From contig OZ281499.1 of the NCBI GenBank assembly GCA_965637545.1, positions 806,001 through 870,000 on the forward strand: 64,000 bases of DNA, given 5' to 3'. Positions 18,119 to 46,059 of this stretch are shown here, piece after piece (position 1 is the first letter of the stretch; each line of letters begins with the position of its first letter). The notes under the pieces were generated by a model. That model was not told the origin of the DNA and did not search any database. It worked only from the letters and a program-made list of their open reading frames with translations. The stretch comes from Phallusia mammillata. Lineage: Eukaryota. The position numbers and the translations under genes were made by a program.

Positions 18119-18822
18119 AGAATCCCATAGACGGTTTCCTTGGCAACTTGCGCCGCATCCTCCGTCTGCATGGCAACCTCAATCGCACGAGAGAAAGTAA
18201 GTTCATCTGACTTGAGTTTAAACATGGCCTTCAACACCGCTTCATTGGATATTGAACAGATGAACCTGGTTCGTAAAGCTTCATCCAACGGATCTTAGAT
18301 AGAGGTGAAATCACATGTAGCAGCATCGTGACGAATCCGGGCGGCCAATTCCTGCACCGATTCACCTGGCTTTCGCTGCATGTTGCTCCAAAACCGGAAC
18401 CTTTCGCGAATAATAAAACGCTTGGGATCAAATTGATCTTTCATGAAGCCTTCAATCTCATTCATTGTTAGATCGTTGACGTCTTTTGCAGGCGAACTTT
18501 GTCCTGCTAAATTGGACAGCAGCTTGTAAGTTGTAGTGGTTTGGTTCGTCAAAAACACTTGGGCAACCCTCTTTTCGGATATTGCAGGAGCCTTCACAAA
18601 TGTTGAGAAGCGAGACCAGTAGTCGTCCCACAATTCTGTCGTAGAATCAAAGGGGTTAAAGCTAGGTGCAGCAACATTAGAATTGGCAACGGCGGGACCA
18701 GAAGACGTTTCCAACACAGACAGGATAAGATTCATTTGCTCCTTATGCTGTCGTTGTTGCTCTTCATGACTTCGTTGTTGCTGTTGCATCTGCTTCTGCA
18801 TCGTCTCCAATAACTTCTCCAT
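18119..18822 (-). pseudogene. gag: Gypsy gag N-terminal/capsid region, disrupted
   Basis: In-frame TAA at 18295-18297 (FTSI*DPLDEALRTRF) and a frameshift near 18120-18130 before the zinc knuckles. Confidence 0.85.
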
Positions 18823-18866
18823 ATTGACACAAACGTTGAGATTGAAACAAGTCGTTCAGTTGACGT

Positions 18867-24663: not shown

Positions 24664-27600
24664 TTACCAAAAATCTGGGTTTTCCAATCTCCGCTCAGTT
24701 TCTTCAAACCATTTGCTTTGTCGTGCATCAACGTATTCAAGTACATCCTCCTTTTCCAATGTTTTGAAAACTTTGGTTGCTTTATTGTAATACCTCATTG
24801 CTTCATTGAGTCGTAAAGTTTCCTCACAAACAATACCAAGATTGTTCAACAAGCGACTGTAAATTGGATGCGTTGAACATGTATTTTCAAACTTTGATTC
24901 CAAAAGTTCAAGTCCAAGTTTTAATGTTGTTTCGCTCGCTTCGAAATCCCCAATGTAACGTTGACTCAATTCAATGTCAAGCAAACACTCAACCTCCATT
25001 TCACATCCAATTTTTTCGTCCATTTGAAGGGCGCGGATTTGCTGAATCAAATCACGCATCAGTGGGATCACGTGATTGCGCACGATTTCTCTGTTTCTCG
25101 GCTTCGATAATAAATCAGATTTTTCCATCAAAAGACCGATTGTGTTGGGAATTTTTTCTGCACACTCCACCACACTTTTTACTACAGCGTAGCCATGTTT
25201 TTTTTTCACATATAAATCTGCGGCAATACTAAACATCAAAATGGCTTCTAAATAATTGCCTTCATTTTGACGTTTTGTGGCTTCGACTTCAAAGTCTTTC
25301 GCAGTGAACGCTTGCCTTTGGCATATCCTTAGAAGTTGTTGTTTAGTCGTTTTAGCTTCGTCATACTCTTTTGTTTTCAATAAATCAACATAATATCGGA
25401 CCAATTGATTGAAGTCGTCAATTTCATCTATGAACACAAATCGAAGCGTTTAAATTAGCGTTTAAAATTGTTTAAATTAAATAGTAAAAATATTAAAAAA
25501 ACATCAGAACAAAACTTGGTAAATGCCGATAAGTGGCGTAGTTTCAAAAGGATCCCTAATTTATAAAGTTTATACCAACGAGTCAAACCGCTTGTCATGC
25601 AGGTTTAGGTGCGATTCGGGTTTACCATTTATTGTTTTAAGGGGTTCGGGTCGTGTTGTGTTCCGATTCAGACAAATTACCCGGTCAGAACCGGTTCTCG
25701 GGTTTTATACAGGTTTAAATCTACTTTTTAACAGATCTTGTTTTACAATTTCTTAAAGTTAGCTCAAGTATTTTAGAATCGATAATTTGTGTGGTTTCGA
25801 TTACAAAATATTGCAGACTGCCTTGTAGTTCAGTTCTGGATCCGGCTCAACTTATATAAAATATAGGGTTCAATTCCGGTTCAGATTAAAAAAAAGTGTT
25901 ATTTACAGTTCAGGTTAGGTTCGGTTTTAAATTTTTTTTCCTAACGACTGAAGTATGTTGCACCGTTTGCAACAGTAAAAAACATTGCATCAGCAAATGC
26001 AATTGTTCATTATTGAATTTCTTTGTTCAATTTATTCAAAAATGTGAATAATTGATTTACCTGTAGTTTGCTGTGGTGATTTGCTGGAATGGGAACTTTC
26101 CTCTGTAGATTCGGTGGAGCGTTGGACTCCGGTATTTGCAGGATTGCTGGAATCTAAACACAAAGGTGACCTTAGAATGCGCTTAGCACTTTTTTACAAC
26201 ATTAGATTCTTATTCCATCTACAATCTTTCTTTGCTTTTATTTTTACCAAGGTTAGCACGTAAGAGATATTTCTGGTTAAACGGAGTAAAATTGTTTAAA
26301 CAGGGTTCGGCAACCTTTTTTGCACAGCAGACCGGTTTGAAAATGAAATTTATTATGGACCGCTCTTTAAAAACCACAAATGTTCAGCACTGAAAACTGA
26401 TTACAGTTATTTCAACTTTGAATCAATGTGAACCTTGAGTAAGTTTATTACGACCCTGTAACAATCTCCTCACGGACCGGCACCGTGCATTGGTTTAAGG
26501 TTTCTCGACAAATATTGACTTTACGACAAAGTGCCAGTCGTTTGTCTTGTACCCATTGTAGCTCGCCATGCGTGTAGATGGGACTTTTTAATTTTGCAAT
26601 GTGAATGAATAAACTTAAAACGTAAGATTTCCAAAAATACCGCACATCTGCACATCCCAAATTAATTAGTGAATTGATTGACAGTTGAAGGGCATTGCTA
26701 AGCGTGCATGACAACAAAAAAATTCTTTAGCAAACACCAAATTCGGGTGTCGTTAGGGAGTGAAAAAGTAAAATATGCGTTTGCAAAGCCAGGGTCTGGA
26801 ATACCACAGCACACTATATACTTAAATAATCCTGTGCAACGTGTAACTTGGTGATTGGTTTACCTGCAGGTTGCTGTCGTGATGTGCTGCTGGAATGAGC
26901 GATTTCCTCTCGTTGGGAAGAGGTGTCATCACCGTGTCTGATGGGAGCTAACCAAAAAAGAAACGAAACGTTTTTGTAAAAACGGAAACTAAAAAAGTGT
27001 TATATACAGACCAACAACGAAAACATATTATGGACAACTACAATTCAACAAGTAAACTATATAACCGGTTTCCTAGTATGCAGATTTCCCCTTGTTAAAG
27101 TAAAAAAAAATTTAGATCAGGCAATTTCATTTTTGAGGCGTATGTACAAATGTTCTGTATAACATGGGTGATAACAAAAGTTCAGAATACATCGAAAACA
27201 ATCATATGTCAGTTGTAAACAAAAAAATGAAGGATATTTAACTTCATGAGATTTGTCAACAAATTTGTTATTTAAAACAAATAATACCTGATGTTTCACT
27301 TAATCTTATCTTTTTGGGAGGATTAGCACCAGAAAGCTTTTGAAATTTTGAAGAAGTTCGTTTCAATCCGGGAGCTGAGTTGTCCCCTTTACAAAAAAAA
27401 ATATTTAAATAATTAAAATTTATGACGTGTAAGTTAACCTTCAGTAACCTCTTAAACATACAGAAGCAATTGAATAACAGTGATATTTTACAAATCGTTT
27501 TTAGATTTGTTCTTATGATTGGGTTTGTTTTGTTTATTTTTGCGACGTCAAACTGCTTTTGACCATCTTTCAAATCGCTCAAACGCGGTTGTATAAATAA

Positions 27601-30600
27601 TCCAATTCAATGCTACATGTGCAATACGAGATGACAGGGCGGTAGGTGGTCAGAGGCGCAAAAAGTCGGGGAGATAGGAAGAGGTGGACATGCATGACTG
27701 GTGACACGTGGTTCGCACGCTAAAAGTTTAGCACTGGTTGTAAACAAGCGTTGGTTCTTGTATCGTTTGGTAATTTTTCTTACCAAGGAGCTGCAATCTG
27801 CTACTGGTGGGAATTTCCCCTTGCTGAGAAGAAGATGGTATTTGCTCTTGAGCGCCCTCTCTTGATTCACGCGCGTGCTGCTGTGATGATTCGCTGGAAT
27901 GGGAACTTTCCCCTGCAGCGTTTGTTGAACGTTGGACTCCGGTACTTGCACGCCTGCTGTAATCTAAACACAAAGGGTGAACTTAGAATGCACTTAGAAC
28001 ATGTATGTGTTTGTATTCCGCTAGTTGGCGCAAACACAGTCTAATAGCTTTTCAATTTTCTATACCTAGGTGCTGAGGTTGGGGGGTTTCCCTTGAAACT
28101 TCCACAGATGATGTTTTCGGTTGTGTGATTTCTATGGATGTATTGGCCTCCCCACTCTCTGTTCGTCCGATGGAATCCAAACATTTAAATAAAATTGTTG
28201 GTCACAGTAAGCAGCTGCTAACTTTATGTGAAAAAGTTCAAACAAGTCAATGTATCTCATACCCGACTGCCGTGGCCTGCTACTGGTGGGAATTTCTCCT
28301 TCATGAGAAGAACGTTGCTCTGGGGCACCCGCTGGTGGTTTGGTAGATTGTTCCACTATGCCGCTAGATGTAGTAGACGGCACTAAAAAGGTAATCAGTT
28401 TGTTTGTAAAGAATACTTTTGTTTGTGGTGTTTAATATGAAAGTTTACCTTCAAAACGTCTGGTTCTTGGTGAGAAATAATGAAGCGGGACGCGTTGACT
28501 TTCGTTGGTGGATGGTTGGTTGACAACCATTTTCCTGGCAACACTTGCTACTTGAGAAACTAGGTTTTCAGGGTTTTGCTTTTCCAACAGATGTTTCAAT
28601 TCTTCACTTATCTCAGTCATTGTGGGACGTTTTGTGGGATCTTGATCCCAGCATCGCTTCATCAGTAGCTGGAGTTGCTCTGCGATTTCTCTGTCTTCAC
28701 CGACCAAAGTTTGCATCCAATCCTGTATTTCCTGGCAGTCTGGTCTTTTTCCGTTCTCGACAAGTTCTAACAACTTTCTTCGGTGTTCGCCTTCCAGATG
28801 TGGATAGGGAGTTTTACGAGCAAGAGCCGAGAAAGTTATCATAGCAAAAGAATACACGTCGTGTTCCTTCCTCGGTTTCGTAGTGGGGTCCTTCAATTTC
28901 TCGGGAGCAGTGTAGTAGGGAGTGAATTGGGGCCTTTCTTTCTTGCTTCGTGCCAAAGCATCCAAAGTTACCGTAGTACTGCAAGTTGCCAGTTCTGCGG
29001 AACCAAAGTCGCCAACCTTGCATTGAAGATCTTCAGTAAGCAAAATGTTTCCAGGTTTTAAGTCCTGATGAATTAAACGTTTGTCGGGCAAATTGTGACA
29101 GAAAGCCATTGCTGTTGCTATTTCGTATAAAATGCGAACGCACACTGCAAGGCCCAGTTCTTTGGATGTATCCGTCAGTAAAGTTTCTAAATCTCCACCT
29201 TTGCAGTATTCCATCACAATTCCCATTGCAAACGACCATTGGACGTAGCCGAAAATTCGAACAACATTTTTATGATCTGCTTTCAGCAAGTGTTCCATTT
29301 CTTCATGAAACCTAAAGAATATATCGATAAATATAGCTATTGTAGTTTTTGTATGTGACAAATCCTACATTTTCACAACCAGTGACTTTTTGTCACCAGC
29401 CACCTCAAATACTTTGATGACAACTTCTTTCTTTAACCCATTGTGGTATCCAAATATAACATCCCCGAAACCTCCTGAACCGGCCTCAAACTTCTCAAGG
29501 TCACACGTGATGTCGCCACAGTCCAATTTTCGTAGCTTTACAAAAGCAAAACAAGTTTTAAATCTCCCATGCTTTAACCCGTTGGCACTTTATGCTTAGG
29601 CGTCCACCCCTTCTAGTAACACTGCGGTTATCGTAGCGTACGCCTACACAAGTTTGCTAAATAACAAGCTCGACGCCATTTGAGCTACTGTAACAACTGT
29701 CGATGACCATACTACATATATTTATTGTTACCTATTTCAGATATGAAAAACCGTTTGACTATAAATTGAATAATAGTTTGTTAGTAAACATGATTTTGCA
29801 GCTTGGAAGTCACGACTGCTTAGGATGGTGTTGTTAAGACCAGTGCTTTTTAACTGGTGTGCACGGTGCACCCTCGGGTGCACCAGTAAGAAAAGGTATA
29901 CAAGGGTGCATCACAAACATTTGATGAACCATTAATATTTGACTTTTAGAAAATTACAAAAAAGATGTAGGTTTCAACTAATGTATAAATGAACCTCTGT
30001 ATTTGAAAAACGTTTTGTGCAGAGTGCGGATTGACGTAAATTTATGTCAAAAGTTTTTGATTAAAAATGGGGCCGATGTCGGTCGATGTGTTGATCGGCA
30101 GATAAAAATATCGCGCAGGTTTAAGCTGCAGCTTGATACGTGATAAAGGTAGGCCAACACTCGCTCATTTCTACGAGACTTAAGTCTTAATTGAGCGCCC
30201 GAAATCGGCCAAGCGCTAAACCAGACAGAAAGAAATGAAACAAAGAAACTAACGCAAGGTTTGTGGCCCGCGCTACACAAACAGTAGGCTAAACGGGCCT
30301 TTACAAACAACCATTAATATGTACTCATCGTCCCAACCCTATGCAATGGTCTGTTATAGCTGAATATGTATAATGAAGGAACATAACGACCCAAATAGAC
30401 GTAAAAAGCGACATGCTTTATTATTCAGACGTTTCGGCAAACACTCATGCAATCATTGATTATACATGTGTTTTTCTGTATTAACAATTATATTTTATCC
30501 CTATTTTTAAATTATCCTTAACAGTATTGGGCAAAAGCAACAACCCCATTTATATAGGTTTGTTAAAGTTATAATAAAGGTCTAGTAAAACAACTAAAGT

Positions 30601-30643
30601 TGTAAAGTGTCGAGATTTCACTTACTTTGTTTGTTGAAGCCAT
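24664..30643 (-). CDS. RIPK-like (TKL group) Ser/Thr kinase with low-complexity linker and C-terminal TPR-like helical domain, 9 predicted coding exons, about 793 aa
   Basis: Predicted exons 30643-30626 (MASTNK), 29535-29369, 29311-28449, 28382-28263, 28158-28066, 27963-27784, 26947-26864, 26153-26061, 25427-24664. All are GT-AG and phase-consistent with no stops. Kinase motifs: GSGGFG, VVIK, alphaC EE, HQDLKPGN, DFG, YTAPE, DVYSF. Last exon has TPR-like YSRLLNNLGIVCEETLRLNEAMRYYNKA. Confidence 0.8.
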
Positions 30644-31069
30644 TGTAAAATCATTCACAATTTTACTGAATATTTTCTCTACTTTTCTATTGCTTTGCTA
30701 CAAACAACAAGAAATAGATTTTAATAAATCTTCAAACGAATTTCCTCTCGCACAAAATTCTACCTGGCAAACTGCTATCGATCGAAAAGGTTGGAATTGG
30801 AATCAGCCATAAAATTAGTAAAATATTAACTTTCCACCTGAGAGCGGCGCTTGTCGCTCTTTTGATGAGCATAACTTTAACTAGTACTGCTTAATTATCT
30901 TTAACCAGTTTTAAAACAAGTTTTTACAACCAATACTTTTAGGCTTTTCGCGGCATCACTGCATCATGTGGTGGAATAATCTTTAAAACCTATTTCAATC
31001 GTTGTTATTGTCGGTCCATGGCTAACTAGATGAACATAAATTCATAACTGGGATCAGTTCTGAAGCGTC

Positions 31070-31260
31070 TATGCAGATCAGCGATCGCTATCTAGGACAG
31101 ACTGCTCGTTTTCAGCAGTTTTGTGCGCTTTGTTTACAGGGGGATTCACCCGGTAATAAAACTCAAGACAGGGCCCTTGGGGGAAAAATGTGCTGGTGGC
31201 TCGTGCTAGCAAGTTTCCGGGCCTCTACTCGAACAACAGTCAGAACTAGATCGGCCTTTA
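31070..31260 (-). promoter_or_regulatory. Putative promoter of kinase gene 1
   Basis: About 500 bp upstream of the predicted ATG exon; GGGGATTCACCCGGTAA at 31140-31156; block conserved with 41160-41345. Confidence 0.45.
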
Positions 31261-31657
31261 ATTGTATCAAAAAATAAAACTAAAATGCTATGATTCCTCC
31301 TTTTATCTGTGTGGCTTTACAATTACGTTAATGTATGAAATGTAAATTAATATATACCTTACTACCCATCATCATTTTAACTTTAGTTTCCACCAATTCA
31401 TTTGCGCCACTGTTTTATTTACATATTATCCACATAATTATCACAAAATATAAAAAAATACTTTTGTTCAACAATAACGGCGCAAAAAGTAAAAGGAAAT
31501 TAAGAAGTCATTATTATGTGCAGCTATGCATAGTTTATACACATGAAAATATTTACAAATGATGTTACATCAATGGGTATTGGTTCTGTGCGATTTATGC
31601 CAAGAAGACCTTAGAAGATAAGAGGTCAAGGCTCGCGCTACACTTGGATGCTTTCTT

Positions 31658-32287: not shown

Positions 32288-32449
32288 TGGATGCTTTCTT
32301 ACACAGGCGGGTTCAGTTAGTAACGGCAAAAACTTGTGTGCTGTGGTGGTGGTTTGCCAGTTGATTTTGTACCTCACCATTTACCACGTGAAAAAAGGGA
32401 ATGGTAAAAGAAAGGTGCCTTTTTAAAAAAAATTAACGTGTTTGTTATT

Positions 32450-33235
32450 CACTCATCATGAGTTGATTATTCACACATAACGAGTTGATCGTTTACTCAT
32501 CACGAGTTAATCACGCAGTGATCATGCACTAATCACGAGTTAATCACACATTGATCACGAGTTGGTCATGCACTAATCACGAGTTGGTCATGCGCTGATT
32601 ACGAGTTCACACAGTGATCACGAACTGAGTATACCTGTTGATCATGCACTAATCACGTGTTAATCACGCACTGATCGCGAGTTAATCACACATTGATCAC
32701 GAGTTGATCATGAACTACTCACGAGTTAATCACACATTGATCACGAGTTGATCATGCACTAATCACGAGTTAATCACGCATTGATCACGAGTTGGTCATG
32801 CACTAATCACGAGTTAATCACGCATTGATCACGAGTTGATCACGAACTGAGTATACCTGTTGATCATGCACTAATCACGTGTTAATCACGCATTGATCAC
32901 GAGTTGATCATGAACTACCCACGAGTTAATCACGCATTGATCACGAGTTGGTCATGCACTAATCACGAGTTAATCACACACTGGTCACGAGTTGGTCATG
33001 CACTAATCACGAGTTGGTCACGCGCTGATTACGAGTTAATCACACACTGATCACGTGTTGATCACGAACTGAGTATACCTGTTGATCATGCACTAATCAC
33101 GCACTGATCGCGAGTTAATCACGCTTTGATCACGAGTTGATCATGAACTACTCTCGAGTTAATCACGCATTGATCACGAGTTGGTCATGCACTAATCACG
33201 CATTGATTACGTGTTGATCATGCACCAATCACGTT
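32450..33235. repeat. Minisatellite of about 10-bp units (GATCACGAGT/TAATCACGCA-like) with a 222-bp higher-order period
   Basis: Continuous ATCAC/ATCAT-based units; marker GAACTGAGTATACCTGTT recurs at 32622, 32844 and 33066. Confidence 0.9.
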
Positions 33236-33908: not shown

Positions 33909-34632
33909 CTATTTGTACGACAAGAGATAAGTAGGATAAGCACTTGCATGTCGAAATACAATATACAAGCCTGGATTGGAAACATTATCAACGACGCTGT
34001 CAAATGGTGTCCCGTCACTCTGCATTGGAGCAAAAGACATACGCCGGTTTCCTTGGCAGTACGCCCCAGTCACAACTTCGACCAAAAACATGCTTCTCTC
34101 TCGTCGAGCATTTGGTTTTGTGTATTTTTGTGAATACTTTGCACTTACTGCAAAGTAAACGCCTCTTCGAGACCTACTTGCTGAAAAAAACACGATTTAA
34201 ACCGTATAAAAAATGTTCCTAGCGTGGTTTTAATTGCTAAAAAAATGAACTGGAATTTTACCATTTTTTCCCGCAAAGCTTCTACCGAAACCGTGTTGCA
34301 AGATTTTATCACAAGTTGCTACGTCAGTTCCGTGAAAGAGTTGCTGAGTAACATTAGTAGTTTGCATTTTTGTTTCGATTCTGTTTTTGTGTGCCTGATA
34401 TTGTCTCCATAGTGTCGGGTTCTGTATTCGATTCAGCTAAACAGCAAGTTTGTTTTAGTCATTTTGTACATTTCCAGGCAAAAATACTTTAGATTTACCC
34501 GAACGCGATAATAATGTGGCATTGTGGATTGAAATATTTGAAGAACAGTTTTGTATTCAGTAGAATTTGCTGACACTGGTACACATTTCCACTGTTGACC
34601 ACCCATGTTCTCCCACGTTGCCGGCAGTTGAC
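33909..34632 (-). CDS. PARP catalytic domain, PARP14/15-like mono-ADP-ribosyltransferase (H-Y-L triad)
   Basis: Exons 34632-34499 (QLPATWENM...STEYKTVLQIFQSTM), 34436-34262 (LNRIQNPTLWRQY...LFHGT...GFGRSFAGKN), 34180-33909 (GVYFA...FDSVVDNVSNPGLYIVFRHASAYPTYLLSYK*). Phases 1-0, 0-1, 1-stop are consistent. The ORF track shows only the last exon. Confidence 0.88.
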
Positions 34633-35382
34633 CTAAAATCAGTTTGGTATCAAAATTACGAAATAATAACCAAGATATTAGGGCGTGGCGGTTTCTACGT
34701 TGTTTCTAAAAGAGGGAGGGAATCATTGACAGCATGGCATATTCACCAATTGACATGGGTAGGAAAAAAACAAAAACTTTATCTTGGATTAGTGTTCAAA
34801 CCCAAATTTTTGTGTTACCTTATAGTACAAGGATTTAAAACAGCAGCGTTCATCCCCGCACTGTTGAGACAATTTTTGTTTCATAACTATTTCCATGTCA
34901 ACGTTTATAAAAACAATGTTTAATTAAAAATTCTACTGGCTATTGTATATTGGTGAAATACAAGTTTAATGGCAAGAAGGCAATTGTATCATAGTAAGCT
35001 ATGCCTGTCAGCAACATCAGTTAACATTTAATTCTTTTCAATTTCAACTCAATAAAAGTTTAAAAAGACCCATGCAACACGAGATACTGGTAAGAATTTG
35101 CAAAGCGCCTTACTACACTCCTAAACTTAAAACTAAGAACCCAGAAACACACCAAAGTACAACTAGCAGCAAACGGAAACCTGTGAAACCACGTACTGCA
35201 TGATACATTTAAATGTTCAATTAATGTACAAAATGATTATATATCCTTTAATTTTAAGGTAGCTTTGAAAGTAACAAAATGGACTCCGGTACTTGCAGGA
35301 TTGCTGGAATCTAAATACAAAAGGGTAAGTTAGAATCCGCTTGAGACTTGTTTGGGCGCAAACACAGTCGAATTTTTTATAC

Positions 35383-38300
35383 CTAGGTGCTGAGGTTGGG
35401 GGATTTCTCTTAAAACTTCCACTGATGATGTTTTCGGTTGTGTGATTTCTATGGGTGCGTTGGCTTCCCTTCTCTCTGTTCGACCGATAGAATCCAAACA
35501 TTTAAAAAATATTGTTGGTCACAATAAGCAGCAGTCAACTTGAAGTTCAAACAAGTCAATGTATCCCATACCCGACTGCCGTGGCCTGCTACTGGTGGGA
35601 ATTTCCCCTTGTTGAGAAGAACCGTGCTCTTGTGCGCGCCCTGCTGGTTCGGTAAGTCGTTCCACTGTGCGACTAGATGTAGTAGACGGCGCTGAAAGTA
35701 AAACAGTTTGTTTGCAAAGAATACTTTTGTTTGTGGTGTTTAGTATGAAGGTTTACCCTCAAAACGTCCAGCCATTGGTAAGTAGTATTGAAGCGGGACG
35801 CGTTGACTTTCGTTGGTGGATGGTTGGTTGACAACCATTTCCCTGGCAACACTTGCTGCTTGAGAAAGTAGGTTTTCGGGGTTTTGCCTTTCCAAGAGAT
35901 TTTTTAATGTTTCCTTTATCTGAGTCATTGTGGGACGTTTTGTGGGATCTTGATCCCAGCATCGCTTCATCAGTAGTTGGAGTTGCTCTGCGATTTCTCT
36001 GTCTTCGCCGACCAAAGTTTGTATCCAATCCTGTATTTCCTGACAGTCCGGTCTTTTTCCTTTCTTGATTAGTTTTAACAGCGTTCTTCGTTGTTCGCCT
36101 TCTAGATACGGATAAGGAGCTTTACGAGCAAGAGCCGAGAAAGTTATCATTCCGAAAGAATATACGTCATGTTTCGTCTTAGGTTTGGTGGTGGGGTCCT
36201 TCAGTTTTTCAGGAGCGGTGTAATAGGGAGTGTATTGAAGCCTTTCTTTCTTGGTTCGTGCCAAAGCATTCACAGTTACCGAAGTACTGTAAGTTGCCAG
36301 TTCGGCGGAACCAAAGTCGCCAACCTTGCATTGAAGCTCTTCAGTAAGCATAATATTCCCAGGTTTTAGGTCCTGATGTATTAAACGTTTGTCGGGCAAA
36401 TTGTGACAGAAAGCCATTGCTGTTGCTATTTCGTGTAAAATGCGAACGCGCACAGCAAGGCCCAGTTCTTTGGATGTATCTATTAGTAAAGTTTCTAAAT
36501 CTCCACCTTTGCAGTATTCCATCACAATTCCCATTGCCAAAGACCATTTGACGTAGCCGAAAATTCGAACGACATTTTTATGATCTGCTTTCAGCAAATG
36601 TTCCATTTCTTCTTGAAACCTTAAGAATATTTTAATAAATATTCTATAGCTATTGTAGTTTTTGTGGGTGAAAAATCCTACATTTTTAAAACCATCTTTT
36701 TCTGCGTTGCACCAGCGACTTTGAATACTTTGATGGCAACTTCTTTCTTTAACCCATTGTGGTATCCAAATAAAACATCCCCGAAACCTCCTGAACCGGC
36801 CTCAAACTTCTCAAGATCACACGTGATGTCGCCACAGTCCAATTCTGGTAACTTTACAAAAAACAAAACAAATTATAAATTCCCTGTTTTGGCCCGTTTG
36901 CGATTTTTCATGCGTACTTATAATATAGATTGAATAATATTTTGTTAGTAAACATGATTTTGCACTATACACGAACTTGAAAAGTAATTTAATCATAAAT
37001 AATACTGCCAAGGTACTGGTGTATATAGAATATATAGTTCAGACGTTTCGACAATCTCTGTACCTACACTGATGATGACAACAGAGATTGTTGAAACGTC
37101 TGTATGATGTATTCTATATACTCTAGTACAGGGGTGCAAAAATGCGGTCGCACGGTCGCGCCGCGCGACCAATAAACTTGCGTGCGCGACCGCAGTTTGT
37201 AGTCACAATTAAATGTGGTCTATATTTTTGTAATTTAATTTATTCTCAGAATAAAAATAGAGCAATGATGAAGTGGCACAATTAGCGGAAAAATAGAGAG
37301 TAGGCAACGATCTAACAATATTCTTTTCGCGAAAAACACGCTTGAGTCAAGCCGCGACCGAATTACGTTAGTCGCATATTTTATGAGGCACTATCGCGAT
37401 GCTACGGTAACTGTGTAAAATGGGCAATCATCAACTGACATGACATGACTGTGACTGTCATAAGTTGAAGTAGTGATTTCCGCACACGCTTTTACAACCA
37501 AAAAAGAACATTTACTTTTCACTATCATCTCAAGCATTCTTGCTCGTCGCGCGCGAATATGATGCTAATCGTCGTGGGTATGGTGCAATCGCACACGTGT
37601 CTCAAAAAGAATTTGCAACGCATATGCACTCAACAACACGTCACTCACGCCGCACAAACATTTTCAACGGATTGTAGCTATTAGATTTGAAAAGACGCAA
37701 TATTTTGGCAAAAAACGTTTGCCACAAAAATATGCTGAGGTCATAATTTCAAATCTTCGTATAATGCGTCGTATAACATAAATCAATACATGTTGTTGTA
37801 TTTAGGGTTAGCCCGATAATACAGTATTACCTGATGCTATTTGTGGCATCGCTACTCATACGATACTTAGGTGGCATCAGAACAGATACCGATACTTTTA
37901 TAAACGAGTAAAACGTGCTTTAGTCTGTCATTTCTGCAACTAATTTTGCGAACGGTCACTTAAACTGTTTTTTTCATGTTTTTTTCAACAATGTGTCCTC
38001 CTTTTTGGGAATGGAAATATGGTAGGCCTAGTTGCAACACAATCTCTGCGTCCGGTTTGGACGTTTGCTGTTCGTATCTGAGAACATGCGAGACGAGCCG
38101 AAAGACCGATTTGCCGAATCAGCAATTTTAGCGACGATTTGTCAGGCTTCGGGGTAAAAACTGGATACCGGGCAAACCCCAATTCCAAAACCTATGCCAA
38201 TAGACTATGCCGTGATGTTACCGAAGCACAGTGCTCCACAACCTGCCGCCGTATGCGTACTCGGAGATGAATTAGTGCGGCCGCGAAACTGTATAGGGAA

Positions 38301-40700
38301 ATATATGTGTTGGCGGTAATGCGTTGATTTAAACTTAATTTTAGGCTATAAAACTGGTATAAATAGATTTTTCGTGGCTACTCCGGTTGCAATACGTGAC
38401 AGACTTTTTGTACGCTATTGTGTGCAAACAATGCCAAATGTCAGGCGACAAACAACAATTTAGAATCTAAATTTTAGATAGTGTCGTCATTAACAATTGA
38501 AACAAATCATTAATGCTGTTCCGTTCAATCTATGGATTAGACAAAAAATTCTTGAAATCACTAGATTATAAACAATTTAAGACATTTGGTGGCCGTTTGT
38601 AAAATAGGAACCTGCGATACGGCTATTAGTAGCGAAATGGTTGTGCATTAGGTGGAAAAAGACACATACACAAAAACGTATGTGCTACTAAAATTATTTG
38701 CGCGCTACCAGATTCCGAAAAAAATTTTGCACCCCTGCTCTAGTACTATGGCAGTAATATTTATGATTAAATGATTTTGCATCTTGGTAGACACGACTGT
38801 AGCATGTTGTTGTTTGTTGGCATGTTTATCTTACTTTCATGTTTTATAACATGTAGTCCCCTGTGCTGGGTAGTTTGTACCAACCCAGGTTATTTTAAAT
38901 GCACTTTTTACAATTCAAACTAGGGTTGGCAAGCCGGTCAATTGACCGGTCAAATACGGTCAATTGACCGGTCAATTGACAGCACTTTATTTAACCGGTC
39001 AAATACTATTTTTAATTTTAAAAATCAAATGTGGTAAATTTTCTTGGACTTGCTTTTTGGTTGTTGAAAAGGGTAATTTATTTCTAAAAACCCTCAAGTA
39101 GAACAGTTTAGGGCATACTGTTGTATTAATAAGTGCTTTTTAAGCCAATGTAGATGTGTTTTGTTCATTTGAAATAAATCCCATAACAATTAGGGGATAC
39201 TTTTCATTTGAAATTAAGATCTGATTTACGTTACGACAAAGGTTTACAATGCAATTAAAAAACATGCATCACTTCTAGCACCGTTTTATCTTAATAAAAA
39301 TCGGGTGTGATAGGTCCATGAGGGGAAGTTAGTTCATTAGAATTTACTTGGGCTTTTTTGCAAATGTTGCACATTTTGACTGACAGATAAAAAATCTAAG
39401 TAATTTAAAGCATCTGTGTAAACTTGTAGGTCTACAGCCCTTTTTCTATAGTTGATCCAAAAATTGTTTGTAGCTATATATTTAGCTTATAATTTCCCAG
39501 AATAGATTTTTGTGGATAAGTTACAGGTCAGTACTTATTGGGATAAAGTACGTACATATCAAGCTTTTGTATATTCCTTTTTTGTCATGAATGGAGATGT
39601 GTCAATAGCTTAACAGCATAAATTACGATTTTAAGCAGGATAAGCGAGGTTTGCAGTTAAATCTTAGTCAAAATTAGACTTTAAACTAATTTATTTCAAA
39701 TATTATAAGAATCCAGTTTACAAATGTGATTACTGAATGAAAATTACAGACCAACAGTTGGGGCCATTGATGAAATGAAGCATGCAATGCAGTCGGAAAA
39801 GTCTGTAATATAATATAAACTGAACATTTCCTATTTCACAAACAAATTTACATGAGTTGAAACCTTCATTTCCATTACTTATGGTTTAGAAGAAGATTAA
39901 ACTTCCAACTTTTAACTAAAATTGCAATTTAATAATGGGAATAGTATTTGACCGATATTTGACCTATTTGACAAGTATTTGACCGGTCAATTGACCAGAT
40001 TTTATTTGACCGGTCAAATGCCCAACCCTAATTCAAACACAAAAACACAACACGTAATCATAACCATGTAATAAATAATTTAAATTTGAAGCAAATAGCG
40101 TACCATCATTTATTTTGGCCAAAAAAACAACTTATCACAGAAACAGCGATAACACAAACAATTTCGCGCAGTTTCAAGCTGCTTAATACCTAGGAAAAGG
40201 TGGGCGATCCCTCGCTTATTTATACGTGAGCGCCTGAAATCGGCCAAGCGCTAAACCAGACAGATCAAAATGAAACAAAGAAACTAACGCAAGGTTTGTG
40301 AGCGTGCGCTGCACAAACAGTAGGCTAAACGGGCCTTAACAAACAACCATAAATATGTACTCATCGCCCCAGAACGTTTAACGTCGACAACCCTATACAA
40401 TGGTCTGTTGTAGCTGAATATGTACAATGAAGGATATAACGACCCAAATAGACGTAAAAAGCGACATGCTTTATTAATCAGACGTTTCGGCAAATGCTCA
40501 TGCCATCATCTATTGTACATGTGTTTTTCTGTATTAACAACTATATTTTGGCCCCTATTTGTGTATTATTCCCAAGGGGTTTTGTACAACAGAACAGCAA
40601 CAAGCTTATTTATAGGTTTCTTAAAAGTGAAAAATAAATCTCTAGTAAAACAACTAAATTTGTAAAATATCAGGATTTCACTTACGTTTGTTGAATCCAT
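35383..40700 (-). CDS. Second RIPK-like kinase paralogue (kinase domain plus two linker exons)
   Basis: Exons 40700-40686 (MDSTN), 36851-36682, 36619-35757, 35691-35572, 35475-35383. The large kinase exon (863 nt) and both linker exons (120, 93 nt) match the first copy in size and phase. Motifs GSGGFG, VAIK, HQDLKPGN, DFG, YTAPE intact. The 3' end of the gene is uncertain (see findings). Confidence 0.8.
36965..38770. mobile_element. Penelope-like palindromic insertion with hammerhead motif, interrupted by a hAT element
   Basis: 11-bp TSD ATGATTTTGCA (36954-36964, 38771-38781); empty site in the paralogue near 29790; core TACA-CTGATGA...GAAACGTC-TGTA at 37065-37104. Confidence 0.65.
37129..38737. 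mobile_element. Non-autonomous hAT DNA transposon
   Basis: TIRs CAGGGGTGCAAAA / TTTTGCACCCCTG; perfect 8-bp TSD CTCTAGTA. Confidence 0.92.
38921..40030. mobile_element. Non-autonomous hAT element (TAGGG-type TIR)
   Basis: TIRs TAGGGTTGG / CCAACCCTA; perfect TSD ATTCAAAC; subterminal ACCGGTCAA repeats at both ends. Confidence 0.92.
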
Positions 40701-41159
40701 TCTAAAATCAATCACAATTTTACTGAATAGTTTCTCTACTTTTCTAATGCTCTGCTGCAAACAACAAAAAACGGATTTTAATAAATCTTCAAACGAATTT
40801 CCTCTCACACAAAATTTTGCCTGAAAAACTGTTATCGATTGAAAAGGTTGGAATTGGAACCAGCTATATAGTTCGTAAAATATTAACTTTCCACCAGACA
40901 GCAGACGCTTGCTGCTTTTTAGGAGCCTAACTATAACTAGTACTGCTTAATTATCTTTAACCAGTTTTAAAACAAGTTTTTACAATAGATACAAGCTGCT
41001 CCACCAAGCAACGGGAAGGGTGATTCTAGCTTTACGTTTCAACTATGAGACTGGCAAGTTTTTAAACGAATACTTTTCACTTCTTTGCGGCATTACTGCA
41101 TCATGTGGTGGAATAAACTTTAAACCCTTTTCAAAGCGATGTTGATTTCGGCCTACTGC

Positions 41160-41345
41160 TGGCTAGACAGACTGTTCTGTTTGATTTTCATTTTCAACAA
41201 ATGTGGTTTGGCGCGCTTTATTTACCTGGGGATTCCCCCGGGAACAAACCTCCAGCAAGACCCTTAAGGGGAAAAACGTGCTGGTGGCTCGTGCTAGAAA
41301 GTGTCTGGGCCTCCACTCAAACAACAGTCAAAACTAGATCGGCCT
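41160..41345 (-). promoter_or_regulatory. Putative promoter of kinase gene 2
   Basis: GGGGATTCCC consensus kappaB site at 41228-41237 in the homologous position. Confidence 0.45.
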
Positions 41346-43269
41346 TTTTTGTTTCAAAAGATAAAACTAAAATGTTATGATTCCCCCTTTTATCTGCGTG
41401 GCTTCACAATTATGCTACTGCACGTAATGGACTTTCATATTTACGCACCTACCACTATTTTAATTGTTTAGTTTTTATCACTTCATTTGCACCCGTATTT
41501 TATTTACATTTTCTACACATAATTATCGCAAAGTGTAAAAAAATAATTTTGTACAACAATAATGGCATAAAAAATAAAACAAAAATTAAACAGTCACTAT
41601 TATGAGCAGCTATGCATAACTTATACACATGAAAATATTCACAAGTAATGTTTCATTAATGGTTATTGGTTTTGTGCGATTTGTACAAAGAAGTATGCTT
41701 TACACAAAAAACAAAAACAAACAGAGAACATCACATTTTAGCAAACTTGAATCAAACATGTTCCACTGGTTTGGCAGTAATGTTACTTGCTTAACAAAAT
41801 TCACAAAAATCTGGGAAACAGATGAACGTTTTTGTGATTGCAGCAAATCACTGCCTGGTAAACATGTTATAAAATTTCACAGTAATGAAACAATTCACAC
41901 CTTAAAAAGACAATATCTTGTCAAATAGTTGGAAGTTTTAGCATAATCATGATCAAATAAATGGAACATAATCACAGTTGAATTTACAATTAGCACAAAA
42001 ACTCGCCCACATTGGTTACAATAAAATTAAAGTAAATAAAACTTAAACACTGCAGATAAAAGTGCCGAAGTTTACATCTTGAAATTAGAATCTTGTAATA
42101 GACAGTTGGAAGATTAAGCATAATTGTGATGGAATAAATGCAACAGAACCACAGTCGAATTTGCACTTGGCACAAAAAGTTACCCACTTTGTTCACAACA
42201 TAATAATAAAGTTGCCATTGTGAAAAACAACCAAACTGCGACACAAGGTGTCAATAAAACATGCTTGATGGAGAGGTAACTGTCATGCACAGATGTTAGT
42301 GAGCCAAAGACATTGAACATTTCAGTGTTAGAATTCACATGCAACAAAAATATTATATTTTAAAGTTGCACATTTTTTAAGGCGTTGTAGATATTAAAGG
42401 CAAACTGCTGTAGAAAATGAAAAGATGTGACAAATATTTCATGACAATTTAAAATGTTCATAACTATATTGCATAACAATTAAACTTTGGGTTTAAGTGG
42501 AATTTAGGTTGTAAAACCAAAAAAAAGATGACAAAAAATTGTTATTTGTTTCCTGCTTAAAAGTGCGAAAAAAGTATCCATTCTGCCAGATATATTTTCT
42601 GACTGCCATTGCCCAACCATAACATCATACATGTACAATGCTACATTGCAATAATAAGAAATAACATTTTGCCATGACCCTTTAAACCACTGTTGGTGAT
42701 GACTTCAGAACATGAGCCACTATTAGGTGCTACAATAGTTTTGTGTGCCGCAAATAATGTGTTGTGGTTGTGGCACTACTAGTGTTATGTGGAAATATAT
42801 GAACAAAACATGTTGCTGATTTTGTCCGCATTTCCAGAGGGCACACACACAATGTCACTTGTGCAGTTTCAGAAAAAGTAACATTATTAGCCATTTGCAA
42901 GTTGAATAAGAATACAATGTGTTATATCATACCAAATGTAATTTAACTAATATTTCTAATACAAAGCAAATACTGACCGGCTAGAATAAGGAAACTAAGC
43001 CCACAAATTTAAAATGTGAAATTAACTAAACGATTTCAACCAAGATTTTTAAAGCATTTACCCAAACAAGTATTGTAATCTATTTTCAAGTGATGCGTAA
43101 AATTTATCACACTGTTGCTTGTAAATGGCATTAATGCAGCTTTTGCTGAACATACACAAATGTATTGTGAATGTGTTACCTGTGGAAGTAAGGACAACAA
43201 GCAGCAACATGTTTTCAGGTAAACATGAGGTGACAAAATGAATGACAATAAACCACACCGAGCATAACT

Positions 43270-43555
43270 CAGCAGTCAGCACCACACAACAAAACAGAAG
43301 ACCACAACACAACAAGAACACCATACAACGAAACAAAAGCACCACACAATAAAACAAAAACACCACACAATAAAACAAAACACCATACAACAAAACAAAA
43401 ACACCATACAACAAAACAAAAACACCATACAATAAAACAAATACACCACACAATAAAACACGAACATCACACCTCAAAGCAAGAACACCACACAACAGAA
43501 ACACAAAGCCACCACAGCAAAACAAGAACACCACACCTCAAAACAACAGCACAAC
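43270..43555. repeat. 21-bp tandem repeat (CACCACACAATAAAACAAAAA-like)
   Basis: Visible tandem array that generates the spurious hydrophobic minus-strand ORFs. Confidence 0.9.
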
Positions 43556-46059
43556 TAATTCCATGCACAATATACATTTCAAGCATAAACAACTGAATTC
43601 AACTGTGCTAAATATCCTTTCTGAATCAGAAATATGCTGCATCTACTGATCCACACAGATTTTTAATCCTAAATAAGCTAAAAAATCTGAGACTTTTACC
43701 TAAAGAAGTTATCACTGTATAATTTTGAACTTGAAGATAATTCAAAAGGCCTTTATGTGACAACACTGAGCATTTGTGACTGAAATACAAATGCCAGAAA
43801 CAAACAAGTGCAGATCATCACAGTGCCAATTGCTGGGTGTTCATTACGTCCTGTTCAGAAAACTTCCACAGCCGCTGATTTGGACCTCTATATCAATTGC
43901 CCCGGGGGAATCTAAAGTTATAACTTATTTACCTAAAGCATTGTCTGTACTCACCCAGAACACAAGTCAATAAAAACTTATCAAATAAGTATAAATACCT
44001 TTCAAATATACAGTTATACCTTTTACTAACCACTACAAGATTGGGTAGAAGTGGAATTGTCACTTTCCATGAGTTTTGGAATACCCAAGACAAACAGATT
44101 TAGACAATAAAGAAGAAAAAACATCCTGAAAACAAAAAATTACTACTGATAGTTTACATAAGTTTATAAGAAATTTAGCAAAAACCTTTATATTTCTCTA
44201 TAGCAGTGGGATGGAGCTTACAGCCTTCTGGTAAAGATTTCCAGATGAAAGTTGCAGCTATCCTTGAAAGCTGAAATCCTTAAATCAGGTTTTTCATTCT
44301 GCAGAAGTGGCAGATAAATATTTTAACAATTCTTAGCCAAATACTATGCCTGTCACCCTTTTTGCATAGGTTTAAACTTAAAATCATGTTGCTTTTCATG
44401 TATTTAAAGTATTTATTTTCCTGTCATGACAAATTCTTCTTTTTTCGTCATGAAACAAATCAATTTATACAATTTGCACCCAGCTACTGCATATCTTTGA
44501 GTGAGATAAACTATTACACTACTTTCATGTTGACTGTTATATATTTTACCTGTCATTCTCCATCTGCACGATGCAAGCTATACCTGTATTTTCCTTTATT
44601 ACTTTTTCTTATGCACCCACAATCTTATTACATTTCGCTCTGGGATATTTCTTTCATGCATTAATTATTGGTCAACTTTACTAAACAACTCATTCTCTGA
44701 AAAAAAAATTCTTGTTTCTTCACTTACACATAATTTTTATTTTAACAATTAAACTCTGGTTTTCTACTAAGAATTGTTTCTTATTAGAGTTATTTCACCA
44801 GTCTTGAACATTTTAGCTCTTCAGTTGAGTTCAGTAAAATAGTTATAACAACAAAATTGTACTAAAATATTTGCCCTGCTAAAAACAGCTGCGCAACCTC
44901 GAGATGATTTAAAGGACGACAAATAAAGGGCACAATTGGTGGAAAGATTGTAAATGTGCTTTAGCTACACTGTCTTAGATGCCACAACTGTGGTGAGTAT
45001 AGCTTGTTTCTGCTTTCTATTTACATGCTTTTATGTTAAATGGATTTCTAAGCTTCATTCAATCTGCTGACAAGAAATAACCGTAACCAATTGTTTAGCT
45101 TTGTTTTTTCTAAAGTTTATAACCTTTAACTTCACTAGCTTTTACTGTCATACCTCTGGGCAGAGAGATTTTTTTCCTTAAACAAAAACCTTTATCTTCC
45201 GTTGCATAACTGGTTCTTTAACTGCTCCTGTGATTTAAATGTTTAAGATTTCTGTTTCTTTGTGTAAATGTCTACTTTTTGCTGTGAGTTGTTGAAGGAT
45301 CAGCAAGTCATCTTGACCTGACAGGGATCGCGACGAGAACGCTCCTTCATTGATCCCCAAAACACAACTTCTGTGCCATGTTGTGCTCTAAACAAGTTCA
45401 AGGTTTTCTATCAAATACAAAGGTAGACATCATTTTACTATGGCTTCAACTTTAAAGATTCAAAAAAATCATGAACTTCTTGAAATAAAAAAGCACATAA
45501 AGAATCCTGTTAGACATTGTCCATCCACAGAGCTTGAAAATAAAACAAACAATTTAAGTCAAGATAATAATTAATCAAAAACAGTTATTGTCCTTACATA
45601 ATACTGTAAGTATAATCAATTGATGTCGGGGAAAAAAGCCCATCAGACTGCCAGAAAACATCTCTTGCAGCAATAAATTAGTAGTGATGTTCTGAAATTA
45701 TAAAACCAGTTCAAATGTAACAAGAAATTTACAGCAAATCTATGTCACAATCCTCACCAGCAGATGGGCATATAGAAAATTACTGTGAGTTCTTTATCTG
45801 AAAACAAAGGTAAAGTCTGTACAGTAAACAATGTTTCTTTGGATTTAAAATTTCCTTAAATCCACGATAAATAGTACTTCGGCAAAAACATAATAAAATG
45901 TATACATAGCTTTGAAACACTACTAACACTTTTATTGAGATAAACTTTCTTGGCCATAAAAACTCCCTGATACTGTACAACATAGCCTAAATATTTTGTA
46001 ACATATTTGTAATACTTTAACCTGCATGATAATACATTTTCTTGCAATAAGACAATCTT

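What the first reader, a model, noticed from the sequence alone, without database searches (positions are those of the whole stretch)
33909..40700. Candidate RIPK-like kinase fused to a mono-ADP-ribosyltransferase (kinase-linker-PARP)
Seen: an intact RIPK-like kinase gene whose last good linker exon ends in phase 1 at 35383, and 750 bp downstream a complete three-exon PARP catalytic domain starting at a phase-1 acceptor (34632). Joining them gives an uninterrupted ORF of about 613 aa. No other PARP N-terminal exons (WWE, macro, zinc finger) are visible in between. Known: vertebrate RIPK1-4 and ANKK1 carry death, RHIM, CARD or ankyrin modules, not PARP domains, and H-Y-L PARPs (PARP14/15) are mono-ADP-ribosyltransferases active in innate immunity. 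Inference: a kinase with a covalently attached ADP-ribosylation effector. Caveat: an intervening acceptor at 35310 would run into a stop unless that exon is skipped or a weak donor is used.
Basis: partly seen in the sequence, partly recalled or inferred. Interest (0 to 1): 0.88.

Follow-up and report, generated by a model that had tools for sequence, protein, structure and literature searches.

The report
Kinase gene abutting orphan PARP exons
In this sea-squirt genome, a partial copy of an immune-type kinase gene sits just upstream of the last three exons of a PARP14-like enzyme gene in a compatible reading frame, but the sequence alone cannot show that the two are spliced into one protein, and the default splicing would keep them apart.

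Summary
On the minus strand there is a RIPK-like kinase gene: ATG at 40700, kinase exons 36851-35757, and phase-1 linker exons ending at 35383. About 750 bp downstream lie three intact exons (34632-33909) encoding a complete PARP14/15-type H-Y-L catalytic domain. Joining 35383 to 34632 gives a 613-aa ORF.

The kinase gene is not an intact gene. It is a partial duplicate of the neighbouring kinase-linker-TPR gene (29.5-24.7 kb). Homology stops at 35280, inside a linker exon, and a stop codon follows 14 codons later.

The PARP exons have the same exon structure and phase-1 entry intron as a Clavelina macro-PARP gene. No macro, WWE or KH exons occur anywhere in the window.

Fusion requires skipping two stronger acceptors (35310 and 34705), and both lead to stops. 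Introns here are short and ascidians use SL trans-splicing. The default products are therefore a 444-aa kinase and a separate 184-aa PARP starting at Met 34606.

The PARP exons look selectively maintained. Continuous kinase-PARP ORFs exist in marine protists, so the architecture is viable but not unique. I estimate a fusion isoform at about 0.25. Only RNA data can decide.

The parts
40686..40700 (-). First coding exon of kinase gene A (ATG GAT TCA ACA AAC, donor GTAAGT, phase 0). A conserved acceptor about 55 nt upstream may be a 5'UTR or SL acceptor.
   Evidence: The exon is conserved with paralog B at about 30.63 kb (MASTNK). Coordinates were checked.
36682..36851 (-). Kinase exon k1. It carries the GSGGFG glycine loop and the VAIK lysine.
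35757..36619 (-). Kinase exon k2. It carries the alphaC Glu, HQDLKPGN, DFG and APE motifs. The donor GAGG|GTAAAC is phase 1.
   Evidence: Pfam Pkinase matches at E 2.6e-39. The best PDB hit is RIPK1 at E 1.3e-29.
35572..35691 (-). Linker exon L1, rich in Ser/Thr/Pro/Gln, phase 1 in and out.
   Evidence: It is colinear with P0002.
35383..35475 (-). Linker exon L2, phase 1 in and out. Its donor CTAG|GTATAA is the proposed fusion donor.
35237..35310 (-). Remnant of linker exon L3. It has a strong acceptor with a CTAAC branch site. The first 31 nt are homologous to the paralogs' L3 exons. Homology breaks at 35280/35279, followed by 14 new codons and TAA.
   Evidence: Homology to the two L3-like exons of B ends at the same base. 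Including this exon gives a 444-aa product.
34633..35279 (-). Unique spacer with no Pfam hit in any long frame. It holds three ATTAAA hexamers and no AATAAA. A strong pyrimidine-rich acceptor gives an exon start at 34705, which yields a stop when joined to a phase-1 donor.
34499..34632 (-). PARP exon P1 (QLPATWENMGG...). Its phase-1 acceptor has a weak pyrimidine tract. Met 34606 sits in the context GAGAACATGG and is the first ATG after the 34705 acceptor.
   Evidence: The Clavelina macro-PARP gene has an intron of the same phase one codon from this position.
34262..34436 (-). PARP exon P2 (RIQNPTLW ... LFHGT ... AGKN), carrying the triad His.
   Evidence: Pfam PARP scores 29.0 bits. Alignment.
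33909..34180 (-). PARP exon P3 (GVYFA ... GLYIVF ... YK, TAG stop), carrying the triad Tyr and Leu.
   Evidence: Pfam PARP scores 30.5 bits. PARP14 structures match at E 8e-15. Alignment.
24667..29535 (-). Tandem paralog B, a kinase-linker-TPR gene with two L3-like exons at 27963 and about 26165. It is the parent-type architecture of gene A.
   Evidence: B is 86% identical in DNA to A over 1.67 kb. It is colinear with Phallusia protein P0002. TPR_12 matches at E 5e-9.

Best explanation
The locus is a chimeric arrangement made by gene rearrangement in an ascidian.

How it arose (shown):
- A partial duplicate of a RIPK-like kinase-linker-TPR gene came to lie about 650 bp upstream of the last three exons of a PARP14/15-type macro-PARP gene.
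- The duplicate carries the upstream region, the ATG exon, two kinase exons, two linker exons and 31 nt of a third linker exon.
- The three PARP exons encode the whole catalytic domain and have lost their own macro/WWE part.

How it is most likely expressed (inferred):
- Introns here are short (62-96 nt), which I take to favour pairing of sites across the intron, so the 35383 donor should pair with the nearest strong acceptor at 35310.
- That gives a 444-aa kinase ending in a short novel tail.
- The next acceptors downstream (34705 or 34632) are then left without a partner donor. Such unpaired acceptors are the substrate for spliced-leader trans-splicing in ascidians.
- The result would be a separate mRNA translated from Met 34606 into a 184-aa PARP catalytic-domain-only protein. 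In effect this is a two-cistron, operon-like unit.
- A kinase-PARP fusion of 613 aa could arise only as an exon-skipping isoform.
For: Rearrangement:
- A/B homology (86% over 1.67 kb, introns included) ends at 35280, inside exon L3. It ends at the same base against both L3-like exons of B.
- Upstream blocks 40157-41693 and 42534-42741 are also duplicated. The segment 33367-35279 is unique in the window.
- Kinase-linker-TPR is the architecture of B and of the Phallusia mammillata protein P0002.

Origin of the PARP module:
- It aligns end to end with tunicate macro-PARPs at about 50% identity; the named ones are from Clavelina and Ciona savignyi.
- It shares their three-exon structure and the phase-1 entry intron.

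The PARP module looks maintained:
- It keeps 22 of 26 invariant columns, and 84% of highly conserved columns. True homologs range from 76 to 96%.
- Simulated neutral decay at half the A/B intron divergence leaves it intact in 7% of runs or fewer.

Default splicing:
- Only two pyrimidine-rich acceptors lie between 35383 and 34632. They are at 35310 and 34705, and both give stops. The 34632 tract is weaker, at 9 of 15 pyrimidines.
- No ATG lies between 34705 and Met 34606, which has A at -3 and G at +4.

Ascidian background (PMC1488885):
- In Ciona, SL trans-splicing acts on unpaired acceptors.
- Operons lack intercistronic DNA and mostly lack AATAAA. No AATAAA occurs here either.
Against: - No RNA evidence of any kind could be reached.
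- The conserved LPxxWxxM motif extends 8 codons upstream of Met 34606, exactly to the ancestral phase-1 acceptor. That fits an exon still read from its acceptor.
- A catalytic-domain-only PARP is unusual. The short 'stand-alone' hits in databases look like truncated predictions.
- The absence of an upstream ATG over 99 nt is expected by chance about one time in five (my own estimate from base composition, not a tool result).
- All three upstream donors (k2, L1, L2) are in phase with P1.
- Continuous kinase-PARP proteins exist in protists, so the fusion would be a workable protein.
Confidence: 0.4

Rival explanations
1. True kinase-PARP fusion. The L3 remnant is skipped, or its weak donor CAA|GTACCG at 35293/35292 is used. 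The 35383 donor is then spliced to 34632. The product is a 613-aa (or 619-aa) protein with an active RIPK-like kinase, an 80-aa disordered linker and a C-terminal H-Y-L mono-ADP-ribosyltransferase, as a major or regulated isoform.
For: - The join gives an uninterrupted ORF, and phase 1 is shared by the k2, L1 and L2 donors and by the P1 acceptor.
- P1's acceptor is the ancestral cis-splice acceptor of macro-PARP genes.
- No other upstream PARP exons occur in the window.
- The PARP exons are intact and look conserved.
- The kinase has all catalytic motifs, and its dN/dS against B is 0.28.
- The same layout (complete kinase, about 45 aa, C-terminal PARP10/14/15-type domain, 437-571 aa) exists as continuous ORFs in environmental contigs and in a transcript marked complete from a marine microbial-eukaryote transcriptome collection (MMETSP) (P0223, P0209, P0284, P0282, P0285).
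Against: - Two stronger acceptors intervene, and both give stops.
- The 72-nt intron into the L3 remnant is inherited intact, with its branch site, from a parent gene where it is constitutive.
- The weak donor shows no improvement over the paralogs. It is read through in P0002, a protein that to my knowledge derives from a transcript.
- Short introns favour pairing of sites across the intron, so loss of the downstream donor should cause read-through rather than exon skipping (inference from general splicing knowledge).
Confidence: 0.25
2. The PARP exons are an unexpressed relic. A recent deletion or rearrangement destroyed a macro-PARP gene and the 3' part of kinase copy A. The three exons have simply not had time to decay, and gene A makes only a truncated kinase or nothing.
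For: - The junction lies inside an exon and creates a stop at once.
- The age of the junction need not equal the A/B duplication age.
- The D-loop differs from ten relatives at two otherwise conserved positions: ATxYGxG reads ASRSRRG.
- On the 71 residues shared with P0002, A carries more lineage-specific changes (9) than B (5). This is my count from the sequences.
Against: - If the junction is as old as the duplication (13.5% intron mismatch), an unconstrained module stays intact in 7% of simulations or fewer, and in under 0.1% once indels are included.
- All five internal splice dinucleotides, the stop and the catalytic triad are preserved.
- Retention of conserved positions lies within the range of functional homologs.
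Confidence: 0.2
3. Artefact or mis-assignment. Either the junction at 35280/35279 is an assembly chimera between paralogous kinase copies and another locus, or the PARP exons belong to a gene whose 5' exons lie far upstream, with kinase gene A nested in its intron.
For: - The kinase family is multi-copy in this genome, according to unchecked notes from other windows, and such families invite mis-joins.
- P1 needs an upstream phase-1 exon.
Against: - No macro, WWE or KH exon occurs in the 30 kb upstream on this strand.
- The next upstream gene ends in a RING exon ending at 46888.
- The window has no N runs.
- The duplicated blocks on both sides are colinear.
Confidence: 0.1

Closest known systems
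Vertebrate RIPK1/RIPK4/RIPK2 kinases
   Same: The kinase domain's best solved-structure matches are RIPK1 (E 1.3e-29), RIPK4 and RIPK2, ahead of BRI1 and MLKL. It has a non-RD catalytic loop (HQDLKPGN), like RIPK1 and RIPK2 as far as I recall. The VAIK, DFG and APE motifs are intact.
   Different: It has no death domain, RHIM, CARD or ankyrin module. Its relatives in this genome and in Phallusia carry a Ser/Pro-rich linker and a TPR domain. Orthology to any RIPK was not tested by phylogeny.
PARP14/PARP15-type macro-PARPs (mono-ADP-ribosyltransferases), especially tunicate ones (Clavelina lepadiformis CAK8697157.1; Ciona savignyi H2Z3G6)
   Same: The catalytic domain aligns end to end at about 50% identity to tunicate members. 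It has the H-Y-L triad, the same three-exon structure and a phase-1 entry intron.
   Different: No macro, KH or WWE exons are present. The D-loop reads ASRSRRG where relatives have ATxYGxG. It sits behind a kinase gene.
Uncharacterised kinase-PARP proteins of marine microbial eukaryotes (P0223, P0209, P0284, P0282, and transcript P0285 from the marine microbial-eukaryote transcriptome collection, MMETSP)
   Same: They have the same order and size: an N-terminal complete protein kinase, a short linker and a C-terminal PARP10/14/15-type domain, 437-571 aa as single continuous ORFs. They are colinear with the 613-aa model.
   Different: Identity is only 23-31% in the kinase and 32-39% in the PARP domain. 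The ascidian parts each have closer tunicate relatives, so any fusion here would be an independent origin. In the ascidian the fusion depends on an unproven splice.
SL-resolved operons of Ciona (Satou et al. 2006, PMC1488885)
   Same: Two cistrons lie on the same strand. The downstream cistron begins at an acceptor with no partner donor. No AATAAA lies upstream of it.
   Different: No SL-bearing reads or poly(A) sites are available, so whether the kinase 3' end abuts the acceptor is unknown. The species is not Ciona.

Membership tests
RIPK family (RIPK1-4/ANKK1) | TKL-group kinase domain most similar to RIPK kinase domains | tested here: met
   The top 25 solved-structure hits are RIPK1, RIPK4 and RIPK2 (E 1e-29 to 1e-21), ahead of other TKL kinases. 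No phylogeny was run.
RIPK family (RIPK1-4/ANKK1) | C-terminal death domain, RHIM, CARD or ankyrin repeats | tested here: not met
   Pfam finds nothing in the linker exons. Paralog B and P0002 carry TPR instead.
PARP10/14/15 clade mono-ADP-ribosyltransferases | PARP catalytic fold (PF00644) with an H-Y-[L/I] triad instead of H-Y-E | tested here: met
   PF00644 scores above its cutoff on P2 and P3. His in LFHGT, Tyr in GVYFA and Leu in GLYIVF align to PARP14 and to ten relatives. The triad numbering comes from my own knowledge of PARP1 and PARP14.
PARP10/14/15 clade mono-ADP-ribosyltransferases | N-terminal macro, KH or WWE reader domains in the same gene (PARP14/15 type) | tested here: not met
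   tblastn with eleven macro-PARPs finds only catalytic exons in the 64-kb window. The spacer frames have no Pfam hits.
PARP10/14/15 clade mono-ADP-ribosyltransferases | ADP-ribosyltransferase activity | not testable with these tools
   Conserved positions are retained at 84%, but the D-loop differs at two conserved positions. An enzyme assay is needed.
Kinase-PARP fusion proteins (protist-type) | Kinase and PARP catalytic domains in one polypeptide | not testable with these tools
   The ORF is possible only through the 35383->34632 splice. No transcript-derived fragment was found in the protein database.
Kinase-PARP fusion proteins (protist-type) | Common descent with the protist fusions | tested here: not met
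   Identity to the protist fusions is 23-39%. The PARP part is about 50% identical to tunicate macro-PARPs and shares their introns. The kinase part is 86% identical in DNA to a kinase-TPR paralog.
Ciona-type SL-resolved operon | Downstream cistron starts at an unpaired acceptor that receives the spliced leader, and the upstream mRNA ends at that site | not testable with these tools
   The geometry is compatible (PMC1488885). SL reads or 3' RACE are needed.

The most novel reading that the evidence does not exclude
An ascidian has recently assembled, by phase-1 exon shuffling, a single 613-aa protein that couples an active RIPK-like kinase to a PARP14-type mono-ADP-ribosyltransferase. This would be an animal counterpart, of independent origin, to the uncharacterised kinase-PARP proteins of marine protists. 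It would mean one innate-immune-type effector that both phosphorylates and ADP-ribosylates.
Probability: 0.25. Interest if true: 0.7.

Novelty: new variant of a known kind. Interest (0 to 1): 0.45.

Why it matters
If the fusion is expressed, it would be, as far as I could find, the first animal protein joining a RIPK-type kinase to a PARP14-type mono-ADP-ribosyltransferase. Both belong to families known from innate immunity, and the gene lies next to IAP- and NACHT-like genes. It would also show the same architecture arising again in an animal, independently of the protist one.

If it is not expressed as a fusion, the locus is still a clean, datable example of two things. First, symmetric phase-1 linker exons let a kinase family exchange C-terminal modules (TPR here, PARP there). 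Second, spliced-leader trans-splicing could rescue an orphaned 3' gene fragment as a separate cistron.

Either outcome can be tested with a single RNA data set.

Tried and rejected
- **Transcript evidence.** I searched for a transcript-derived protein fragment spanning the P1 junction, using the P1 frame with candidates of 50-157 aa. No candidate was found. The kinase search found no product of this genome, only the Phallusia paralog P0002.
- **Hidden PARP N-terminal exons.** tblastn with eleven macro-PARPs against the whole window found none. Pfam on the four longest spacer frames found nothing.
- **A longer P1 starting at the strong acceptor 34705.** The extra 24 codons match nothing upstream of LPxxW in 17 relatives. 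That start is in phase 0 relative to the PARP frame, so a phase-1 donor joined to it gives a stop. Rejected as coding.
- **An ATG-initiated first exon in the spacer.** The ORF at 35208-35116 has a GTAAGG donor, but the donor is in phase 2 and would create TAG on joining P1, by my own reading of the sequence. Rejected.
- **A second copy of the PARP segment in the window.** This would be expected if it were part of the tandem duplication unit. None was found even with 7-nt words. Only 33248-33373 matches 42534-42741.
- **TE insertion splitting exon L3.** The rest of L3 and the TPR exons are absent downstream of the breakpoint. Rejected.
- **Loss of the triad Tyr.** I first suspected this because ASRSRRG replaces AxYGxG. 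Counting PARP1 and PARP14 residues showed that the triad Tyr is the one in G(V/T/I)YFA, which is present.
- **Literature.** No paper held all the terms for a kinase-PARP architecture. The 2014 survey of PARP architectures (PMC4245714) does not mention one.
- **Structure prediction.** Not run, because the spliced PARP or fusion protein has no single reference and I did not type long sequences.
Full report
**Observation**

The window has no N runs. It is from a eukaryote with short introns.

On the minus strand I rebuilt the gene model from the sequence:
- ATG exon 40700-40686 (MDSTN, donor GTAAGT, phase 0)
- kinase exon k1 36851-36682
- kinase exon k2 36619-35757
- linker exon L1 35691-35572
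- linker exon L2 35475-35383

The k2, L1 and L2 donors all leave the frame in phase 1.

About 750 bp downstream lie three exons with canonical borders:
- P1 34632-34499, entered in phase 1
- P2 34436-34262
- P3 34180-33909, ending in TAG

The acceptor at 35310 and its stop at 35239-35237 are also as described.

**Identity of the parts**

Kinase:
- Pfam calls Pkinase at E 2.6e-39.
- The nearest solved structures are RIPK1 (E 1.3e-29), RIPK4 and RIPK2, ahead of BRI1 and MLKL.
- The glycine loop, VAIK, HQD, DFG and APE motifs are all present.

PARP:
- Pfam calls PARP on both P2 and P3, above its cutoff.
- The nearest solved structures for P3 are PARP14, PARP15 and PARP10.
- The spliced module aligns from LPxxWxxM to the C-terminal Y-L-x-[TS]-[YF] with ten relatives, with His, Tyr and Leu at the triad positions.
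- A search of 1.84 billion representative proteins found 2243 relatives and none closer than about 53% over the exon. A 55-aa fragment reached 68%.
- The closest full-length relatives are macro-KH-WWE-PARP proteins. Those I traced to a source are from the tunicates Clavelina lepadiformis and Ciona savignyi.

**Organism**

The only close kinase relative in the protein database is a Phallusia mammillata protein, P0002. It is 86% identical to A over the 71 shared kinase residues; by my own count from the sequences it is about 91% identical to B over the same stretch. The window is therefore from an ascidian, either Phallusia or a close relative.

**What the kinase gene really is**

A tandem paralog, B, lies at 29535-24667.
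- A and B are 86% identical in DNA over 1.67 kb, introns included.
- Their upstream regions also match: 40157-41693 against 30104-31607.
- B continues through more linker exons into a TPR domain (TPR_12, E 5e-9).
- B is colinear with P0002, which reads kinase tail, linker, TPR.

In A the homology stops at 35280, which is 31 nt into linker exon L3.
- It stops at the same base when A is compared with either of B's two L3-like exons.
- After the breakpoint, A reads 14 new codons and then TAA.
- The remainder of L3 and the TPR exons are nowhere downstream.

Gene A is therefore a partial duplicate whose 3' part was replaced. It is not an intact gene.

The kinase part is probably still constrained:
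- dN/dS of A against B is 0.28 over 335 codons.
- dS is 0.25, and intron mismatch is 13.5%.

**Where the PARP exons come from**

- In the Clavelina macro-PARP gene the catalytic domain is split into the same three exons.
- In that gene the intron before (D)LPTSW is phase 1, one codon from the position here.
- The 34632 acceptor is therefore the ancestral cis-acceptor of a macro-PARP gene.
- No macro, WWE or KH exon is detectable anywhere in the window.
- The 1.9-kb segment 33367-35279 is unique in the window.

The module is thus orphaned from its own gene.

**Is the PARP module alive?**

- It keeps 22 of 26 invariant columns and 33 of 44 near-invariant columns.
- In a leave-one-out measure it retains 84% of conserved positions. 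Ten real homologs range from 76 to 96%.
- The exception is the D-loop, which reads ASRSRRG where relatives have ATxYGxG.
- I simulated neutral decay at half the A/B intron divergence. The ORF and its splice sites stayed intact in 7% of runs without indels, and in under 0.1% with an indel rate of 0.8% per base chosen to reflect the gaps in the A/B intron alignments.

If the junction is as old as the duplication, the module has been under selection. If the junction is younger, this argument fails.

**Fusion or not**

Evidence for fusion:
- Phase 1 is shared by every relevant site.
- The LPxxW motif runs right up to the acceptor.
- The architecture is viable. Continuous ORFs with a complete kinase, about 45 residues of spacer and a C-terminal PARP10/14/15-type domain exist in environmental eukaryote contigs.
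- One of these (P0285) is a transcript marked complete from the marine microbial-eukaryote transcriptome collection (MMETSP).
- These proteins are colinear with the 613-aa model but only 23-39% identical to it. Any ascidian fusion would therefore be independent in origin.

Evidence against fusion:
- Only two pyrimidine-rich acceptors lie between the 35383 donor and 34632.
- One is the inherited L3 acceptor at 35310, which has a CTAAC branch site and a 72-nt intron.
- The other is a stronger acceptor at 34705.
- Both give stops when joined to the 35383 donor. The 34632 tract is weaker.
- The in-frame weak donor CAA|GTACCG is identical in the paralogs. It is read through as coding in P0002, which to my knowledge derives from a transcript.
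- With introns of 62-96 nt, pairing of sites across the short intron is expected. Loss of the L3 donor should then cause read-through into the stop rather than exon skipping. This is an inference from general splicing knowledge.

**The rival that fits best**

In Ciona, spliced-leader trans-splicing acts on acceptors that lack an upstream partner donor. Operons there have no intercistronic DNA and mostly lack AATAAA (PMC1488885).

Here, once L3 is the terminal exon:
- The acceptors at 34705 and 34632 are unpaired.
- There is no AATAAA in the region.
- No ATG lies between 34705 and Met 34606, which has A at -3 and G at +4.
- Translation from that Met gives a 184-aa complete catalytic domain.

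None of these points is individually significant, and no RNA data were reachable.

**Verdict**

I rank the readings as follows:
- separate products, a truncated kinase plus an SL-type PARP cistron: 0.40
- an appreciable fusion isoform: 0.25
- an unexpressed recent relic: 0.20
- an artefact or a nested gene: 0.10

The locus is a well-defined case of module exchange through phase-1 linker exons in a RIPK-like kinase family. This agrees with another first-stage note on the same window. The headline claim of a covalent kinase-PARP effector needs one RNA experiment.

Noticed in passing
window 24667-29535 (-): Paralog B appears to be a complete kinase-linker-TPR gene with two L3-like linker exons, starting at 27963 and about 26165. 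The second ends at a GTAAAT donor. The linker is built from repeated phase-1 exons.
   Followed up: partly
window 14693-18855 (-): A long retrotransposon ORF of 1162 aa (zinc-knuckle gag, protease/RT/RNase H/integrase-like) is preceded by a 186-aa gag-like ORF. This is probably an intact LTR element.
   Followed up: no
window 53093-54541 (-): A 483-aa reverse-transcriptase ORF of non-LTR type lies within the region of the IAP/NACHT gene.
   Followed up: no
window 46888-47121, 54810-55097, 61270-63246 (-): An IAP-type RING exon, a BIR exon and NACHT-like P-loop exons (GQVGIGKTT) lie on the same strand upstream of the kinase genes. This is an innate-immunity-like gene neighbourhood.
   Followed up: no
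window 36964-40157: Intron 1 of gene A holds about 3.2 kb that is absent from B (about 0.3 kb there). It contains short inverted repeats (36978-37017 with 38742-38781, and 38936-38980 with 39979-40023), probably small transposon insertions.
   Followed up: no
window 32436-33233: A tandem repeat array, with units of roughly 70 nt at 72-84% identity, lies between the PARP stop and the upstream region of gene B.
   Followed up: no
window 43061-43646: A low-complexity repeat is open in frames on both strands (HHTTKQK-like on +, VFLL/YGV-like on -). It lies where a tandem-duplication model would place a second PARP copy, but no PARP similarity remains.
   Followed up: partly
proteins P0223, P0209, P0284, P0282, P0285, P0206, P0080, P0199: A family of uncharacterised kinase-PARP proteins occurs in marine microbial eukaryotes (environmental contigs and one transcript from a marine microbial-eukaryote transcriptome collection). 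I found no paper describing them.
   Followed up: partly
protein P0055: A 569-aa relative combines Nup98 GLEBS, CAP-Gly and a PARP14-type catalytic domain. This is another example of this catalytic module being shuffled onto unrelated N-termini.
   Followed up: no
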